Source: Dendrobates tinctorius
Taxonomy: Eukaryota
Assembly: GCF_039654945.1 (NCBI RefSeq)
Contig: NW_027361679.1
Coordinates: 123,938,001 to 124,002,000 of the forward strand
Direction: 5' to 3'
Length of the DNA: 64,000 nt
The notes under the pieces are model-generated. The model searched no databases. It was not told the origin of the DNA and saw only the letters and a program-made list of their open reading frames with translations. The translations under genes were made by a program, and so were the position numbers. Of the stretch, positions 3,993 through 54,550 are shown one piece after another. How positions within the stretch are numbered: position 1 is the stretch's first letter; every line of letters starts with the position of its first letter.

Positions 3993-4165
3993 TTAACGTC
4001 TGTAGGGGTGGAATTGCACATTGTGATTCTGCCCTCGTCCCGCGCCACTTCCCCCAGCGGCCGGGCCTGCCGATGCTGGTGCAGTGGGTCCTGTTGTATA
4101 AGATGGGGGCTGTTGGCTGAGGTCCGAGAAACTCTGTCCAAACCCACTCATGTCCTGTCCATATC
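3993..4165 (-). CDS. DAZAP1: DAZAP1 last coding exon (approx. exon 12) with C-terminal PY-NLS-type shuttling signal
   Basis: Translates (G)YGQDMSGFGQSFSDLSQQPPSYTTGPTAPASAGPAAGGSGAGRGQNHNVQFHPYRR* (TAA 3993-3995). Acceptor ttattctttgtag. Confidence 0.97.
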
Positions 4166-20083: not shown

Positions 20084-21097
20084 TTAAACTGTTTATCTGC
20101 AAAACAAATTCACAAAAAAAAAAAAAAAAAAAAAATCAACTATACCACCATATGAAAGTCTAAACAGTTCAATTTCAGTTGCAGATGACAGATTCCCTTA
20201 AAAAAACCTAACACTTAAAAAAAAAAAAAATTAACTTGTGAAAATCCCTGAACTCCCACTCCCCCCATGAATCTGCAGTTTGTGGAGGTGTTGCTCCATT
20301 GCAAAGACATTCTCATTTATTGTTTTGGAGTGAAATATGTGAAATCTCTGCCTATAGCCAAGCTGGGCATTTCTTCACTGTCTTCTCTAGGGGAATGTAA
20401 TTTTACCTCTCCCTACCAGACACTGCCAATCACAGGTCAGCAACTCATTTTGCAGTCTGTCTGATATGATGCAGAGTTGTGATTAGCTGAGCCTGAGAGG
20501 GAGGCGTGACACTGCGCTCTTACAGAGAAAACTGAAAAAATGACTAGTTGCACTACTAGCCGAGCTTTCACATATTGTGCTCCAAAAGCAATAAATGTGA
20601 ATATGTCTGCAATGGGGTGACGCAGATAGAAAGGGAAAAAAGTGGCAGGATCTAGGGAGAACAGGGCTGTACAAGGCAGGGAGCTTTTGTTTGCACAAGA
20701 GATGGGTTCTTTTAAAAGTTTAGGTTCAGTTTAAACATCCCTGATGTGGCAGTTAACACTGCATAACTCGACCTCTGAACAAAAGACAGAAGTTATGTAA
20801 GCTATCAAGTAATAAAAGTATTAGCAGCGATTTATTAGAATTTTAAAAGGAACCTAAACTTAAAGAGGTCATGAAAGTAATGTATTTCAGATTATACAAT
20901 AATTAAAAAAAATATAAAAAAATAAATATTATGAGAAGGGGCATTAATGTAGATGTTCAAAAATTTCAATATCAAAAACTGACTGGAACCCCATAATCAG
21001 ATCTGTTCCATGGCAGGTTATTTTTTTCCCATGCATGTGAATCCAACGGGCCTCCAAAATTGAGATGGAGGATCTAACGCTACCTACCATTTCTTAC

Positions 21098-21159
21098 CTT
21101 TTTATGTCCTTCATAGTGAGCTCAGATCCACTCGGACAATTTCACAAAGCAGGCATTTC
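21098..21159 (-). CDS. DAZAP1: DAZAP1 alternative 62-nt cassette exon encoding short C-terminus GNACFVKLSEWI* (stop 21122-21124)
   Basis: Acceptor ctctttccag, donor AAG|gtaaga. In phase 1 it reads G-N-A-C-F-V-K-L-S-E-W-I-TGA, matching the Xenopus Prrp C-terminus as I recall it. Confidence 0.85.
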
Positions 21160-21472
21160 CTGGAAAGAGTGATTTCTTCAGGCTTTTTAAGTGGGAGGGT
21201 TAAGGCATGCACTACAACCCCAACCTGACATCCCGCCCAGCCAGGTAATAGGCTTTTTGTGCATGGCAAGGTCAGACATGGAGCGGTCCACTCTGAAGTT
21301 TGGGTAGGACATGGGTGTCTTTGTTTTATACGAAGATGTAAGGAGATTACGAATACTTTTGAAAAGACATTGAACACAGTCAGCTGGTCACTGGGACATT
21401 TTTCAAGAGTCTTTGAAACCCACCCTCAAATGACATATCGTGGGACAAAACTTGCACAAGGACACCACTTAC

Positions 21473-21649
21473 CAAACTGGCTAAAAGCAAAGTCTTGCTG
21501 ACCACCAGGGGGTTTACTGAGATCCTGAGCTGTCTGTCCTGGTGGTGGAGGGTACGCCAGTGGCGCTGCTCCTGGAGTACCAGCTGGTGCTGGAACTCCT
21601 GATGTGACGAACTGATCAGGAGGGGGAGGGGGTGGGCCATAGCCATAGC
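21473..21649 (-). CDS. DAZAP1: DAZAP1 proline-rich coding exon (approx. exon 11)
   Basis: Translates (G)YGYGPPPPPPDQFVTSGVPAPAGTPGAAPLAYPPPPGQTAQDLSKPPGGQQDFAFSQF(G). Acceptor ttattgcag, donor gtaagt, 177 nt, phase 1-1. Confidence 0.96.
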
Positions 21650-21743
21650 CTGCAATAACACATCAAAATATATAGGGATAGCTCGGGATTAGTTCTATTA
21701 GAAGAGCCTGAATTAAATAGGATAAAATTACACTACGTCTTAC

Positions 21744-21875
21744 CAAAAGGAGGTGGTGTTGCATATCCTTGTGGAAAGCCTTGTGCAGGAAATCCTCCTT
21801 GTGGTGTTGACACTAAGAAGGGGAAAGCTGGAGGTGGGGGAGCAGCACCCCGGGCAGCAGGAGGACCATACCCGC
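21744..21875 (-). CDS. DAZAP1: DAZAP1 proline-rich coding exon (approx. exon 10)
   Basis: Translates (G)GYGPPAARGAAPPPPAFPFLVSTPQGGFPAQGFPQGYATPPPF(G). Acceptor ttctccacag, donor gtaaga, 132 nt, phase 1-1. Confidence 0.95.
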
Positions 21876-21977
21876 CTGTGGAGAAGACTGCATTAGGAAG
21901 AACCAAAAGGTAGGAGAGATTGATGTGAATTGCCCGAGTAATAGAGTAACTACAAAGACATATGTCCAGTTACTTAC

Positions 21978-22007
21978 CAATTGTTTGTCCAGCTGGCATC
22001 CACATAC
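21978..22007 (-). CDS. DAZAP1: DAZAP1 30-nt coding exon (approx. exon 9)
   Basis: Translates (G)MWMPAGQTI(G). Acceptor ttctctttag, donor gtaagt, phase 1-1. Confidence 0.94.
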
Positions 22008-22596
22008 CTAAAGAGAAAATGGATTATGAATGTTAGGCCAAGAAATTAACTATGATACATATAAAAAGAACAGGTATTTAATACATTAAAGCAAAACGTT
22101 AATTTTATTCTCTGCAGATGCCCCAACTAAATGGGAAAGATGAGGACTTGGATGTGCAAAAATGATTGGTCTGCCCTCACAAGGGCAAACACTACGAACA
22201 TGTCCTGGCTTTCAACTCTACTGTGCAAATTCCAATTTTATGTTGCCATGAAGGGTGTAACAAAAATCAAAAGAAACAGGATAGGGAATAAAAGATTCCA
22301 TAGAATATACACCATCATTCAGTTGCCTACAAGGTAGAGAACTTCAAAATTAATTTTACAAATTAGCAAATTGCAGTGCCATGTAAGTCTTAAAGCCAGC
22401 TAGAAACATTACATGGCTGTCTGCCAAGCACTCCTGTGGTCTCTGAGAAAGCCTCCGCCAGACATATCTGGCAGCCCGATATTTTCCCCAACAATAAATT
22501 GTCCAGGGCTCCCATTACACAACTGCTGGCTGAACCCACTGATATTGGCAGGTTCAGCCAATATTACTATAATGTGTGCGGATTAACTCTTTAGAG

Positions 22597-31830: not shown

Positions 31831-34800
31831 CCGTATATGCTCGTGTATAAGCCGACCCCCCAATTTTGCCACAAAAAATGGGAAAACTTATTGACAGCCT
31901 AGGGTGGAAAATGCAGCAGCTACTGGTAAATTTCAAAAATAAAAATAGATACGAATAAAAGTAAAATTAATTGAGACATCAGTAGGTTAAATGTTTTTGA
32001 ATATCCATACTGAATCACGAGCCACAATGCTCCATACAGTTCACGATGGCCCCATAAGATGCTCCATACAAAATACACCCCATATATTGCTGCACAAAGT
32101 TTAATAAATGGCCCCTTAAGATGCTCCATAGAATAATATGCCCCCACAGGCTGCCCCCTAGAACATGCCCCCACAGGCTGCCCCCATAGAAGCTGCCCCC
32201 ATAGAATATGCCCATAGAAGCTGCCCCCATAGAATATGCCCATAGAAGCTGCCCCCATAGAATATGCCCCCATATGCTGCCCCATAGGATATGCCCCCAT
32301 ATGCTGCCCCATAGGATATGCCCCCATATGCTGCCCCATAGGATATGCCCCCATATGCTGCCCCATAGAATATGCCCCCATATGCTGCCCCATAGAACAT
32401 GCCCCCATAGAAGCTGCCCCCATATGCTGCCCCATAGAACATGCCCCCATAGAAGCTGCCCCCATATGCTGCCCCATAGAACATGCCCCCATAGAAGCTG
32501 CCCCCATATGCTGCCCCATAGAATATGCCCCCATATGCTGCCCCATAGAATATGCCCCCATATGCCCCCATATGCTGCCCCATAGAATATGCCGCCCCAT
32601 AGAAAATGCCCCCCCACAGAATATGCCCCATAGAATATGCCCCCCCACAGAAGCTGCCCCATAGGATATGCCCCCATATGCTGCCCCATAGGATATGCCC
32701 CCATATGCTGCCCCATAGGATATGCCCCCATATGCTGCCCCATAGGATATGCCCCCATATGCTGCCCCATAGGATATGCCCCCATATGCTGCCCCATAGG
32801 ATATGCCCCCATATGCTGCCCCATAGGATATGCCCCCATATGCTGCCCCATAGGATATGCCCCCATATGCTGCCCCATAGGATATGCCCCCATATGCTGC
32901 CCCATAGGATATGCCCCCATATGCTGCCCCATAGGATATGCCCCCATATGCTGCCCCATAGGATATGCCCCCATATGCTGCCCCATAGGATATGCCCCCA
33001 TATGCTGCCCCATAGGATATGCCCCCATAGGATATGCCCCCATATGCTGCCCCCATATGCTGCCCCATAGGATATGCCCCCATAGGATATGCCCCCATAG
33101 GATATGCCCCCATATGCTGCCCCCATAGGATATGCCCCCATATGCTGCCCCATAGGATATGCCCCCATATGCTGCCCCATAGAATATGCCCCCATATGCT
33201 GCCCCATAGAATATGCCCCCATATGCTGCCCCATAGAATATGCCCCCATATGCTGCCCCATAGAATATGCCCCCATATGCTGCCCCATAGAATATGCCCC
33301 CATATGCTGCCCCATAGAATATGCCCCCATATGCTGCCCCATAGGATATGCCCCCATATGCTGCCCCATAGGATATGCCCCCATATGCTGCCCCCATAGG
33401 ATATGCCCCCATATGCTGCCCCCATAGGATATGCCCCCATAGGATATGCCCCCATATGCTGCCCCCATAGGATATGCCCCCATATGCTGCCCCCATAGGA
33501 TATGCCCCCATATGCTGCCCCCATAGGATATGCCCCCATATGCTGCCCCCATAGGATATGCCCCCATATGCTGCCCCCATAGGATATGCCCCCATATGCT
33601 GCCCCATAGGATATGCCCCCATATGCTGCCCCATAGGATATGCCCCCATATGCTGCCCCATAGGATATGCCCCCATATGCTGCCCCATAGGATATGCCCC
33701 CATATGCTGCCCCATAGGATATGCCCCCATATGCTGCCCCATAGGATATGCCCCCATATGCTGCCCCATAGGATATGCCCCCATATGCTGCCCCATAGGA
33801 TATGCCCCCATAGAAGCTGCCCCATAGGATATGCCCCCATAGAAGCTGCCCCCATAGGATATGCCCCCATAGAAGCTGCCCCCATATGCTGCCCCATAGA
33901 ATATGCCCCCATATGCTGCCCCATAGAATATGCCCCCATATGCTGCCCCATAGAATATGCCCCCATATGCTGCCCCATAGAATATGCCCCCATATGCTGC
34001 CCCATAGGATATGCCCCCATATGCTGCCCCCATATGCTGCCCCCATAGGATATGCCCCCATATGCTGCCCCCATAGGATATGCCCCCATATGCTGCCCCC
34101 ATAGGATATGCCCCCATATGCTGCCCCATAGGATATGCCCCCATATGCTGCCCCATAGGATATGCCCCCATATGCTGCCCCATAGGATATGCCCCCATAT
34201 GCTGCCCCATAGGATATGCCCCCATATGCTGCCCCATAGGATATGCCCCCATATGCTGCCCCATAGGATATGCCCCCATATGCTGCCCCATAGGATATGC
34301 CCCCATATGCTGCCCCATAGGATATGCCCCCATATGCTGCCCCATAGGATATGCCCCCATATGCTGCCCCATAGGATATGCCCCCATATGCTGCCCCATA
34401 GGATATGCCCCCATATGCTGCCCCATAGGATATGCCCCCATATGCTGCCCCATAGGATATGCCCCCATATGCTGCCCCATAGGATATGCCCCCATATGCT
34501 GCCCCATAGGATATGCCCCCATATGCTGCCCCATAGGATATGCCCCCATATGCTGCCCCATAGGATATGCCCCCATATGCTGCCCCATAGGATATGCCCC
34601 CATATGCTGCCCCATAGAATATGCCCCCATATGCTGCCCCATAGAATATGCCCCCATATAATATGCCCCATATGCTGATGCTGCAAAAAAATGACACTCA
34701 CCTCTCCTTGCTGAGGGCCAGGTGCTGGTGTCGCCGCTGGCTCATGACCCGGCACCTGAGATACTCACCTGTCCCCAGTCAATCGCTGCTTGCTGCTGCA

Positions 34801-46237: not shown

Positions 46238-48308
46238 AAGTTTGGACACCTTCTCAAAGCATTTTCTTTATTTTCAAGACTATGAAAATTGTAGATTCAC
46301 TCTGAAGGCATCAAAACTATGAATTAACACATGTGGAATTATATAACTAACAAAAAAGTGTGAAACAACTGAAAATACTGTATGTCTTATATTCTAGGTT
46401 CTTCAAAGTAGCCACCTTTTGCTTTGATTTCTGCTTTGCACACTCTTGGCATTCTCTTGATGAGCTTCAAGAGGTAGTCACCGGCAATGGTTTTCACTTC
46501 ACAGGTGTGCCCTGTCAGGTTTAATAAGTGGGATTTCTTGCCTTATAAATGAGGTCGGGACCATCAGTTGTGTTGTGCAGAAGTCTGGTGGATACACAGG
46601 TGATAGTCCTACTGAATAGACTGTTAGAATTTGTAATATGGCAAGAAAAAAGCAGCTGAGTAAAGAAAAACGAGTGGCCATCATTACTTTAAGAAATGAA
46701 GGTTAGTCAATCCGAAAAATTGTGAAAACTTTGAAAGTGTCCCCAAGTGCATTGGCAAAAACCATCAAGCACTACAAAGAAACTGGCTCACATGAGGACC
46801 GCCCCAGGAAAGGAAGACCAAGAGTCACCTCTGCTGCGGAGGATAAGTTCATCCGAGTCACCAGCCTCAGAAATCGCAGGTTAACAGCAGCTCAGAATAG
46901 AGACCAGGTCAATGCCACACAGAGTTCTAGCAGCAGACACATCTCTACAACAACTGTTAAGAGGAGACTTTGTGCAGCAGGCCTTCATGGTAAAATAGCT
47001 GCTAGGAAACCACTGCTAAGGACAGGCCACAAGCAGAAGAGACTTGTTTGGGCTAGAGAACACAAGGAATGGACATTAGACCAGTGGAAATCTGTGCTTT
47101 GTTCTGATGAGTCCAAATTTGAGATCTTTGGTTCCAACCACCATGTCTTTGTGTGACGTAGAAAAGGTGAACGGATGGACTCTACATGCCTGGTTCCCAC
47201 CGTGAAGCATGAAGGAGGAGGTGTGATGGTGTGGGGGTGCTCTGCTGGTGACACTGTTGGGGATTTATTCAAAATTGAAGGCATACTGAACCAGCATGGC
47301 TACCACAGCATCTTGCAGCGGCATGCCATTCCATCCGGTTTGTGTTTAGTTGGACCATCATTTATTTTTCAACAGGACAATGTCCTCAAACACACCTCCA
47401 GGCTGTGTAAGGGCTACTTGACCAAGAAGGAGAGTGATGGGGTGCTACGCCAGATGAGCTGGCCTCCACAGTCACCAGACCTGAACCCAAATCGAGATGG
47501 TTTGGGGTGAGCTGGACGGCAGAGTGAAGGCAAAAGGGCCAACAAGTGCTAAGCATCTCTGGGAACTCCTTCAAGACTGTTGGAAGACCATTTGGAATGC
47601 ACTTCCCAGGTCAATACGATTAGTCCCCAATCCCCACAATTTTAAGCGTGTCCTGAAAACGCATTTATTCAGACTGGCCTACCACCCCAACACATTAACC
47701 TAATCTATCCCTGTGTGGCAGAGCCAAAAGTTTTACCATAACCAGGTTCCCCGCATCATGTTCCCACATGCTTTATGCCTCCATTAGCCCTCTGTGTCTG
47801 TACTGTTACACACTTAACATTATGACTGGTCCATACAATCAGGGTAACTGTTACCACCCACCTTTCGTGTCTCCCTCTTTCCTCATAGACTGTAAGCTTG
47901 CGAGCAGGGCCCTCTTTCCTCTTGGTATTTGTAATAATCTACTGTATGTGATTATTGTTATGCTGTAATGTCTATTGTCTGTACAAATCCCCTCTGAAAT
48001 GTAAAGTGCTGCGGAATATGTCGGCGCTATAAAAATAAAATTTATTATTATTATTATTTCTGGTGACTACCACTTGAAGCTCATCAAGAGAATGCCAAGA
48101 GTGTGCAAAGCAGTAATCAAAGCAAAAGGTGACTACTTTGAAGAATCTAGAATATAAGACATATTTTCAGTTGTTTCACACTTTAATTTTATAATTCCAC
48201 ATGTGTTAATTGTTTTGATGCCTTCAGAATGAATCTACAATTTTCATAGTCATGAAAATAAAGAAAACTATTTGAATGAGAAGGTGTGTCCAAACTTTGG
48301 TCTGTACC
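46238..48308 (+). mobile_element. Tc1 transposon with disrupted transposase (46638-48155) and L2 3' fragment at 47592-48058
   Basis: MARKKQLSKEKR...GRPR...SDESKFEIFGS...QQDN...WPPQSPDLNP, ~200-bp inverted ends, L2 tail (TTA)n. Confidence 0.9.
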
Positions 48309-54436: not shown

Positions 54437-54550
54437 CACTCCAAAACGCTTAAAGTACTCTCTCAGTTCAGCTTCCCCACAGTTATGTGGAATTCCACCC
54501 ACAAATATCTTGTTAGATTTATTGCTTTCAGTTCTAGGGCTCTTCTGTTG
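54437..54550 (-). CDS. DAZAP1: DAZAP1 coding exon (approx. exon 5): RRM linker and start of RRM2
   Basis: Translates QQKSPRTESNKSNKIFVGGIPHNCGEAELREYFKRFGV (RNP2 IFVGGI). Acceptor tttttgtacag, donor GTG|gtaagt, 114 nt, phase 0-0. Confidence 0.97.

What the first reader, a model, noticed from the sequence alone, without database searches (positions are those of the whole stretch)
21098..21159. NMD-escaping cassette exon that swaps off the DAZAP1 nuclear import tail
Seen: a 62-nt exon with good splice sites, 313 nt downstream of exon 11, reading GNACFVKLSEWI-TGA. The stop lies only 24 nt upstream of its donor, which would be the last junction. Established: stops within about 50-55 nt of the last junction escape NMD, and the mammalian DAZAP1 C-terminus carries the nucleocytoplasmic shuttling signal. 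From recall, Xenopus oocyte Prrp (binds Vg1/VegT mRNA) ends in this peptide. Inference: inclusion gives a stable NLS-less cytoplasmic isoform and turns the last coding exon into 3' UTR, while skipping gives the nuclear splicing factor.
Basis: partly seen in the sequence, partly recalled or inferred. Interest (0 to 1): 0.8.

Follow-up and report, generated by a model that had tools for sequence, protein, structure and literature searches.

The report
Known Prrp-tail exon of frog DAZAP1
The 62-base exon is real and gives the RNA-binding protein DAZAP1 the short tail already known from Xenopus Prrp, a tail unchanged in frogs and salamanders; so this is a known isoform, and its proposed escape from mRNA decay and cytoplasmic location remain untested.

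Summary
On the minus strand, a 62-nt exon (21159..21098) lies 313 nt after DAZAP1 exon 11. It has AG/GT splice sites and reads G-NACFVKLSEWI-TGA, with the stop 24 nt before its donor.

It is not new. The window matches Dendrobates tinctorius DAZAP1, whose RefSeq isoform X5 already ends in this peptide. So do X. laevis Prrp (Q98SJ2) and the X. tropicalis reference protein. The tail is identical in annotated isoforms of 22 frog and salamander species.

In five frog genomes the coding part is 36/38 invariant, against 124/177 for exon 11, and both changes are synonymous. The intron flanks are conserved, and the stop sits 23-24 nt before the donor in all five.

RNA contigs show that skipping (21473>4165) dominates and that the donor 21098>4165 is used. 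The one contig crossing that junction keeps the upstream 313-nt intron. No 21473>21159 joint was seen in four runs of contigs.

The shuttling signal (ZNS) lies wholly in the last exon, so inclusion removes it. NMD escape and cytoplasmic location are reasonable inferences, not shown here.

The scan holds a second note on this same stretch (s1-376897).

The parts
21744..21874 (-). DAZAP1 exon 10 (proline-rich region)
   Evidence: Spliced in the RNA contig X7 record 15. Matches P0162. 66% invariant across five frogs.
21473..21649 (-). DAZAP1 exon 11, 177 nt, ending ...FSQF + G (phase 1)
   Evidence: RNA contig X7 record 15 joins it directly to the last exon. 124/177 columns invariant across five frogs.
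21160..21472 (-). Intron 11a, 313 nt. Its last 120 nt (21279..21160) are as conserved as coding exons, and it is retained in some RNA contigs.
   Evidence: Intron length is 313/313/313/316/384 nt in five frogs. The last 120 nt are 70% invariant, against 21% for the middle of the intron. RNA contigs X1 record 3, X6 record 9 and X7 record 14 run through it into the cassette.
21098..21159 (-). Alternative cassette exon ('Prrp exon'), 62 nt. Codons for NACFVKLSEWI run to 21125, TGA is at 21124..21122, and 24 nt of untranslated sequence run to 21098.
   Evidence: Coding part plus stop is 36/38 invariant across five frogs, and both changes are synonymous (21137, 21125). The tail is identical in 22 amphibian species. 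The donor is joined to 4165 in X1 record 3.
21058..21097 (-). Conserved intronic block just after the cassette donor, with an invariant ATGGTAGGTAG (GGTAGGTAG at 21088..21080). It is a candidate binding site for hnRNP A1/DAZAP1-type factors.
   Evidence: 65% invariant, against 8-12% further downstream. GGTAGGTAG occurs once in the window. Published DAZAP1 ligands include GU(1-3)AG (PMC3834821). Function is inferred only.
3996..4165 (-). Coding part of the last exon (GYGQDMSG...NHNVQFHPYRR, stop at 3995..3993). The ZNS-equivalent residues GPAAGGSGAGRGQNHNVQFHPYRR are encoded at about 4067..3996. The whole stretch becomes 3' UTR when the cassette is included.
   Evidence: The 28-nt loose ends are the reverse complement of 4164..4137. 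ZNS residues are from PMC9445803, Table 3.

Best explanation
This is the conserved alternative penultimate exon of amphibian DAZAP1.

Skipping joins exon 11 to the last exon. That gives the roughly 404-aa hnRNP-type protein, whose C-terminal ZNS (a PY-type signal ending FHPYRR) mediates nucleocytoplasmic shuttling.

Inclusion adds 12 codons and a TGA. That gives the 359-aa Prrp-type protein, which keeps both RRMs and the proline-rich region but loses the 56 residues of the last exon, including the ZNS. Because the stop is only 24 nt upstream of the last exon junction, the fully spliced inclusion mRNA is expected not to trigger EJC-dependent NMD. Its product is then expected to be biased to the cytoplasm, where Xenopus Prrp acts on Vg1/VegT RNPs.

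Shown here: the exon, its frame, its conservation, use of its donor in RNA, dominance of the skipped form, and the position of the ZNS.

Inferred: NMD immunity, localisation and tissue regulation.

The conserved intron flanks, the weak acceptor and the RNA contigs that keep intron 11a suggest that removal of that small intron is the regulated or slow step.
For: Anatomy:
- Searches give the coordinates, frame and splice sites.
- P0162 (D. tinctorius isoform X5, XP_073403307.1) matches the window exons and ends in the peptide.

Known isoform:
- X. laevis Prrp Q98SJ2 (P0185), its homeolog (P0174) and X. tropicalis NP_001006737 (P0032) end identically.
- So do Ascaphus, Bombina and three salamanders.

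Conservation:
- The cassette coding part is 36/38 invariant against 124/177 for exon 11 (Fisher p = 0.0009).
- Third codon positions are 10/12 invariant against 28/59 (p = 0.03). Both changes are synonymous.
- The stop-to-donor distance is 23-24 nt in five frogs.

RNA:
- X7 record 15 (depth 832) and X1 record 4 (depth 54.5) join 21473 to 4165.
- X1 record 3 (depth 7.2) joins 21098 to 4165.

Literature:
- The ZNS is human residues 383-407 (PMC9445803, Table 3).
- Myc-tagged Prrp bound Vg1 and VegT RNA in cytoplasmic but not nuclear oocyte lysate, and no NLS or NES had been found in Prrp (PMC2172032).
Against: - No contig in four runs shows the exon 11|cassette joint. The contig that uses the cassette donor retains intron 11a. 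However, contigs drop minor variants, and some records are filtered out without notice.
- RefSeq X-isoforms can be propagated by homology, so they are not independent proof of expression in each species.
- Conservation at synonymous sites and in the flanks shows an RNA-level constraint. The invariant peptide alone therefore does not prove a protein-level function.
- DAZAP1 nuclear localisation also needs an N-terminal signal (a title cited in PMC3834821), so loss of the ZNS need not make the protein purely cytoplasmic.
- A long 3' UTR could still make the mRNA unstable.
Confidence: 0.7

Rival explanations
1. In this species the region acts mainly as an extended exon 11, or retained or detained intron 11a, that uses the strong donor at 21098. 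These RNAs read GKWCPCASFVPRYVI-stop about 330 nt before the 21098|4165 junction. They would be degraded by NMD or held in the nucleus. The block would then be conserved as an RNA-level regulatory device that lowers productive DAZAP1 mRNA, not as the source of a protein tail.
For: - X1 record 3 runs unbroken from 21501 through intron 11a and the cassette, and then jumps to the last exon. X6 record 9 and X7 record 14 also run from the intron into the cassette. The intron downstream of the cassette is not covered in those runs.
- Intron read-through proteins are annotated in Hymenochirus and Ascaphus.
- Synonymous sites and intron flanks are unusually conserved.
- The acceptor is weak.
Against: - cDNA-derived proteins in X. 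laevis (AAK26172) and X. tropicalis (NP_001006737) carry the spliced tail.
- The 12-aa tail has no amino-acid change in 22 species, and the only two nucleotide changes are synonymous.
- The read-through tails are not conserved between species.
- The stop stays 23-24 nt from the donor although exon length varies between 61 and 62 nt.
- A de Bruijn contig can thread pre-mRNA and mRNA reads into one path.
Confidence: 0.2
2. The exon is used as proposed, but the tail swap does not change localisation. The short isoform differs instead in partner binding, or simply lacks C-terminal activities such as translational stimulation. The NMD geometry would then be incidental.
For: - The invariant 12-aa tail suggests a specific interaction rather than a mere truncation.
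- DAZAP1 nuclear localisation also depends on an N-terminal signal (a title cited in PMC3834821).
- Kress et al. could not exclude a nuclear role for Prrp (PMC2172032).
Against: - The ZNS is the described shuttling signal, and it is removed completely (PMC9445803).
- Prrp-myc associated with its target RNAs only in the cytoplasm (PMC2172032).
Confidence: 0.1

Closest known systems
Xenopus laevis Prrp / DAZAP1 short isoform (UniProt Q98SJ2, GenBank AAK26172, NP_001082088; 360 aa)
   Same: It has the same exon position and the same 12-residue tail GNACFVKLSEWI after ...FSQF. It has the same domain content of two RRMs and the proline-rich region. It lacks the residues encoded by the last exon.
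   Different: It comes from a different species. Here the exon is seen in a dendrobatid genome, and in this species' RNA contigs only its donor junction was observed, not the exon 11|cassette junction.
Dendrobates tinctorius DAZ-associated protein 1 isoform X5 (XP_073403307.1; P0162)
   Same: It matches the window exon by exon wherever the protein aligns, and it ends in the cassette peptide. It is therefore the existing annotation of this very exon.
   Different: It is a computed RefSeq model, so it carries no statement about NMD, localisation or regulation.
Mammalian DAZAP1 short isoform ending ...FVYTLMVRLSSDVA (P0057 right whale, P0060 giant panda). From my memory this corresponds to human 'isoform b'.
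   Same: It also arises from an alternative exon between exon 11 and the last exon. It also replaces the ZNS-bearing C-terminus with a short unrelated tail.
   Different: The tail sequence is different. It derives from an older exon that is in frame in fish, sharks and coelacanth (LGNYPQDPS...GQAEQGYSA). No DNA similarity was found between the frog block and the lizard copy of that exon (z about 0). The two are therefore analogous, with no demonstrated homology.
Poison exons of RNA-binding protein genes (NMD-coupled autoregulation)
   Same: It is an alternative exon with an in-frame stop and strongly conserved flanks, including synonymous-site conservation, inside the gene of a splicing regulator.
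   Different: The stop is only 23-24 nt from the last junction, so the fully spliced form should not be an EJC-dependent NMD target. It also encodes a conserved, cDNA-supported protein tail. Only the intron-retaining form has poison-exon geometry.

Membership tests
Prrp-type short isoform exon of amphibian DAZAP1 | Reading frame from exon 11 gives G-NACFVKLSEWI followed by a stop | tested here: met
   One search gives the translation. It is identical to Q98SJ2 (P0185) and to 21 other species.
Prrp-type short isoform exon of amphibian DAZAP1 | Lies between exon 11 and the last coding exon, about 313 nt after exon 11, with AG/GT boundaries | tested here: met
   The upstream intron is 313/313/313/316/384 nt in five frogs.
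Prrp-type short isoform exon of amphibian DAZAP1 | Donor of the exon is spliced to the last exon in RNA | tested here: met
   X1 record 3 has 28 letters of the last exon joined at 21097/21098.
Prrp-type short isoform exon of amphibian DAZAP1 | Exon 11 is spliced to the acceptor of the exon in RNA of this species | tested here: inconclusive
   no 21473>21159 joint was seen in four runs, which were contigs only. Contigs covering the cassette keep intron 11a. cDNA-derived Xenopus proteins do show the junction.
Termination codons exempt from EJC-dependent NMD (50-55-nt rule) | Stop lies no more than 50-55 nt upstream of the last exon-exon junction | tested here: met
   The distance is 24 nt here and 23-24 nt in four other frogs.
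Termination codons exempt from EJC-dependent NMD (50-55-nt rule) | No further spliced intron downstream in the 3' UTR | not tested
   The 3' UTR below 3993 was not mapped with reads.
Termination codons exempt from EJC-dependent NMD (50-55-nt rule) | mRNA level is insensitive to UPF1 loss or translation block | not testable with these tools
   This needs an experiment.
Isoform switch that removes a C-terminal PY-type/ZNS transport signal | The signal is encoded entirely downstream of the alternative stop | tested here: met
   The ZNS is human residues 383-407 (PMC9445803, Table 3). Its frog counterpart GPAAGGSGAGRGQNHNVQFHPYRR lies in the last exon.
Isoform switch that removes a C-terminal PY-type/ZNS transport signal | The two isoforms localise differently | not testable with these tools
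   There is only indirect support: Prrp-myc bound its target RNAs only in oocyte cytoplasm (PMC2172032).
Poison exon (NMD-coupled) | Premature stop lies more than 50-55 nt upstream of a downstream junction | tested here: not met
   The distance is 24 nt for the spliced cassette. The feature is met only by the intron-11a-retaining RNA, whose stop at 21428..21426 lies about 330 nt upstream.
Amniote/fish alternative penultimate DAZAP1 exon | Detectable sequence similarity to that exon | tested here: not met
   Local alignment of the frog block to the lizard exon (L005 47761..47836 with flanks) scores at the shuffled mean. tblastn with the fish and mammal tails finds nothing in the frog introns.

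The most novel reading that the evidence does not exclude
The cassette and its conserved flanks could form a roughly 300-million-year-old regulatory switch rather than a simple alternative tail. In this reading, nuclear DAZAP1 or hnRNP A1-type proteins bind the invariant AUGGUAGGUAG just after the cassette donor. That binding controls inclusion and the slow removal of the conserved 313-nt intron 11a. The nuclear pool of DAZAP1 would then set how much ZNS-less, cytoplasmic Prrp is made. In the same reading, the invariant SEWI tail is itself a cytoplasmic anchoring or partner-binding motif needed for vegetal RNA localisation.
Probability: 0.15. Interest if true: 0.6.

Novelty: already known. Interest (0 to 1): 0.3.

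Why it matters
Prrp has been studied for over twenty years as a cytoplasmic Vg1/VegT localisation factor. DAZAP1 has been studied separately as a nuclear splicing regulator with a C-terminal shuttling signal. The two are splice isoforms that differ exactly by that signal.

The short form's exon is invariant across frogs and salamanders, and its stop is always placed within NMD-safe distance of the last junction. This gives a simple, testable explanation for the two behaviours. It also points to a compact set of conserved sequences that could be tested for regulating the choice: the last 120 nt of intron 11a, the exon itself, and the GGUAGGUAG block.

None of the pieces is new as sequence. The value lies in a tidy hypothesis and in the conservation data.

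Tried and rejected
- **Word search with the 70-aa peptide (exon 11 plus cassette).** It was blank. Only proteins of 38-122 aa were candidates, so the blank means nothing. Full-length queries then found the isoform.
- **Chance pseudo-exon.** Rejected by the conservation data.
- **Alternative terminal exon with its own poly(A) site.** Rejected. The donor is conserved and is spliced to 4165. X1 has no coverage downstream of 21097. The AATAAA about 270 nt downstream is not conserved.
- **RNA helices that loop out the cassette or pair with its donor.** They were predicted, but covariation counts equal the shuffled controls. The sequences are too invariant to test this, so no structure is claimed.
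- **Homology with the amniote or fish alternative exon.** No support was found. A weak hit at lizard L005 about 47197..47303 is not consistent between frogs, so it was dropped.
- **Exact-product look-ups.** They failed for short isoforms and some long ones. The axolotl gene spans 1.85 Mb, so no salamander DNA was obtained.
- **Papers not held.** Lin and Yen 2006, Zhao et al. 2001, Dai et al. 2001 and Hori et al. 2005 could not be read. What I say about them rests on citations in other papers or on my own knowledge.
- **Masked and human-like sequence.** No N stretch was filled. No human contig was handled.

Full report
**What is in the sequence**

The window carries the 3' two-thirds of a DAZAP1 gene on the minus strand. 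The RRM2 exon lies near 54550 and the stop of the last exon at 3995..3993.
- Exon 11 is 21649..21473 and ends ...QQDFAFSQF plus one G.
- After a 313-nt intron comes the reported exon, 21159..21098.
- Its acceptor is CACTCTTTCCAG| and its donor is AAG|GTAAGA.
- In the frame set by exon 11 it reads GNACFVKLSEWI, then TGA at 21124..21122. That leaves 24 nt to the donor.
- The last coding exon starts at 4165. It encodes GYGQDMSG...GPAAGGSGAGRGQNHNVQFHPYRR.

The donor is very strong, in the 99.7th percentile of GT sites on this strand by a simple matrix. The acceptor has only a short pyrimidine run behind a purine-rich stretch.

**Whose gene it is, and whether the exon is known**

A representative search with a neighbouring exon, followed by word searches with a full-length frog DAZAP1, returned the family.
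- Dendrobates tinctorius isoform X5 (XP_073403307.1, P0162, 359 aa) matches the window's exons and ends in GNACFVKLSEWI. The exon is therefore already annotated in what is evidently this species.
- The X. laevis protein Q98SJ2/AAK26172/NP_001082088 is the original Prrp entry, 360 aa. It ends ...FSQFGNACFVKLSEWI, as does the other X. laevis homeolog.
- The X. tropicalis reference protein NP_001006737 (362 aa) ends the same way.

**Conservation**

The 12-residue tail is identical in annotated isoforms of 22 species. These include the early-branching frogs Ascaphus and Bombina, and the salamanders Pleurodeles, Lissotriton and Ambystoma. The exon therefore predates the frog-salamander split.

I fetched the gene from Bufo bufo, Rhinophrynus dorsalis, Aquarana catesbeiana and Engystomops pustulosus and aligned exon 10 through the cassette and beyond. 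Across the five frogs:

| Region | Window coordinates | Invariant columns |
|---|---|---|
| Exon 11 (coding) | 21649..21473 | 124/177 (70%) |
| Intron 11a, middle | 21399..21280 | 21% |
| Intron 11a, last 120 nt | 21279..21160 | 70% |
| Cassette coding part plus stop | 21159..21122 | 36/38 (95%) |
| Downstream intron, first 40 nt | 21097..21058 | 65% |
| Downstream intron, further on | 21057..20700 | 8-12% |

- The cassette is significantly more conserved than exon 11 (Fisher p = 0.0009).
- The only two changes in the cassette are synonymous: TTG/TTA at 21137 and ATC/ATT at 21125.
- Third codon positions are 10/12 invariant, against 28/59 in exon 11 (p = 0.03).
- Intron 11a is 313, 313, 313, 316 and 384 nt long in the five frogs.
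- The exon is 62 or 61 nt long. The stop is 24 or 23 nt from the donor in all five.

This is the usual signature of a regulated alternative exon. The protein tail is under constraint, and the RNA itself is under additional constraint.

**RNA evidence in this and closely related species (Logan contigs only)**
- In X7, a 522-nt contig at depth 832 joins three consecutive exons (22009..21977, 21874..21743 and 21648..21472, the last two being exons 10 and 11). It then continues with 28 letters that are the reverse complement of the start of the last exon. That is the skipped form, 21473>4165.
- In X1 the same junction has depth 54.5.
- Also in X1, a 432-nt contig at depth 7.2 carries the same 28 letters of the last exon joined at 21097/21098. 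So the cassette donor is used.
- That X1 contig then runs unbroken through the cassette, all of intron 11a, and into exon 11.
- X6 and X7 also have contigs running from intron 11a into the cassette. The intron downstream of the cassette is not covered in those runs.
- No contig shows 21473>21159.

Contigs drop minor variants, can thread pre-mRNA and mRNA reads into one path, and some records are filtered out without notice. Absence of the joint is therefore weak evidence. Taken at face value, though, cassette-containing RNA in these samples is a minority, and much of it still holds intron 11a.

An RNA that keeps intron 11a reads GKWCPCASFVPRYVI-stop, with the stop about 330 nt before the 21098|4165 junction. 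That is NMD-prone geometry. Read-through tails of this kind are annotated in Hymenochirus and Ascaphus but are not conserved.

**How it most likely works**

Lin and Yen's shuttling signal ZNS is given as human residues 383-407, GPPAGGSGFGRGQNHNVQGFHPYRR (PMC9445803, Table 3). Its frog counterpart lies wholly in the last exon. Inclusion of the cassette therefore removes it and turns that exon into 3' UTR.

A stop 24 nt before the last junction is inside the 50-55-nt zone that does not trigger EJC-dependent NMD. That rule is established knowledge; its application here is inference. Conservation of that distance across frogs fits a selected, translated product.

Kress et al. expressed Prrp-myc, which is this short isoform. 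They found it on Vg1 and VegT RNA in cytoplasmic but not nuclear oocyte lysate, and they noted that no NLS or NES had been identified in Prrp (PMC2172032). This fits a ZNS-less, cytoplasm-biased isoform but does not prove it. DAZAP1 nuclear localisation also needs an N-terminal signal (a title cited in PMC3834821).

**Regulation: speculation**

The invariant ATGGTAGGTAG lies 9 nt after the donor. It contains two GUAG units and a UAGG core. Published DAZAP1 ligands include GU(1-3)AG, AAAUAG and GGUUAG, and these overlap hnRNP A1 sites (PMC3834821). GGTAGGTAG occurs once in the window, though a single match is also what 29 of 100 shuffles give. Autoregulation through this block is possible but untested. 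Predicted helices that would loop out the exon or pair with its donor have no covariation support.

**Comparison with other vertebrates**

Mammals have an analogous short isoform ending ...FVYTLMVRLSSDVA. It comes from an alternative exon in the same intron. That exon is an in-frame coding exon in fish, sharks and coelacanth.

The lizard copy lies at L005 47761..47836. Neither protein-level nor DNA-level searches relate it to the frog cassette. The two look like independent routes to a ZNS-less DAZAP1, unless they have diverged beyond recognition.

**Verdict**

The mechanistic claims (NMD escape, localisation switch, ovary-specific use) remain inferences. In this species' RNA contigs, the fully spliced inclusion junction was not seen.

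The scan holds a duplicate note on this same stretch (s1-376897). It did not affect my reading.

Noticed in passing
window 32264-34659: A large minisatellite with a 27/54-nt unit and about 87 copies lies inside a DAZAP1 intron. It has a strong C-over-G skew on the plus strand.
   Followed up: partly
window 20562-20625: A short repeat piece is present on many unrelated RNA contigs in all four runs, with loose ends on both sides. It is probably part of a dispersed, transcribed repeat.
   Followed up: no
proteins P0042, P0044, P0028, P0073: Isoforms that skip exon 11 in frame (...PPPFG|YGQDMSGF...) are annotated in many frogs and in a newt. Exon 11 itself therefore appears to be alternative.
   Followed up: no
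proteins P0231, P0236, P0176, P0195, P0219: Further lineage-specific alternative tails follow exon 11. Ranids have ...FSQFVPGKPLLCLKGLFMA, X. laevis has ...FSQFAGQRSLI, and Pleurodeles has ...TQYEPQDSNLI. Bombina also has its own.
   Followed up: no
L005 47761-47860 (Podarcis raffonei): The lizard copy of the amniote alternative penultimate exon is followed by TAGGTAGGT about 13 nt after its putative donor. This resembles the GGTAGGTAG that follows the unrelated frog cassette.
   Followed up: partly
window 56591-56064, 18562-17618, 43625-42618 (minus strand): Long open reading frames inside DAZAP1 introns look like transposon genes. One is Tc1/mariner-like, and the others may be tyrosine-recombinase or retroelement ORFs.
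   Followed up: no
axolotl record: The annotated Ambystoma mexicanum DAZAP1 gene spans about 1.85 Mb, against 25-60 kb in frogs.
   Followed up: no
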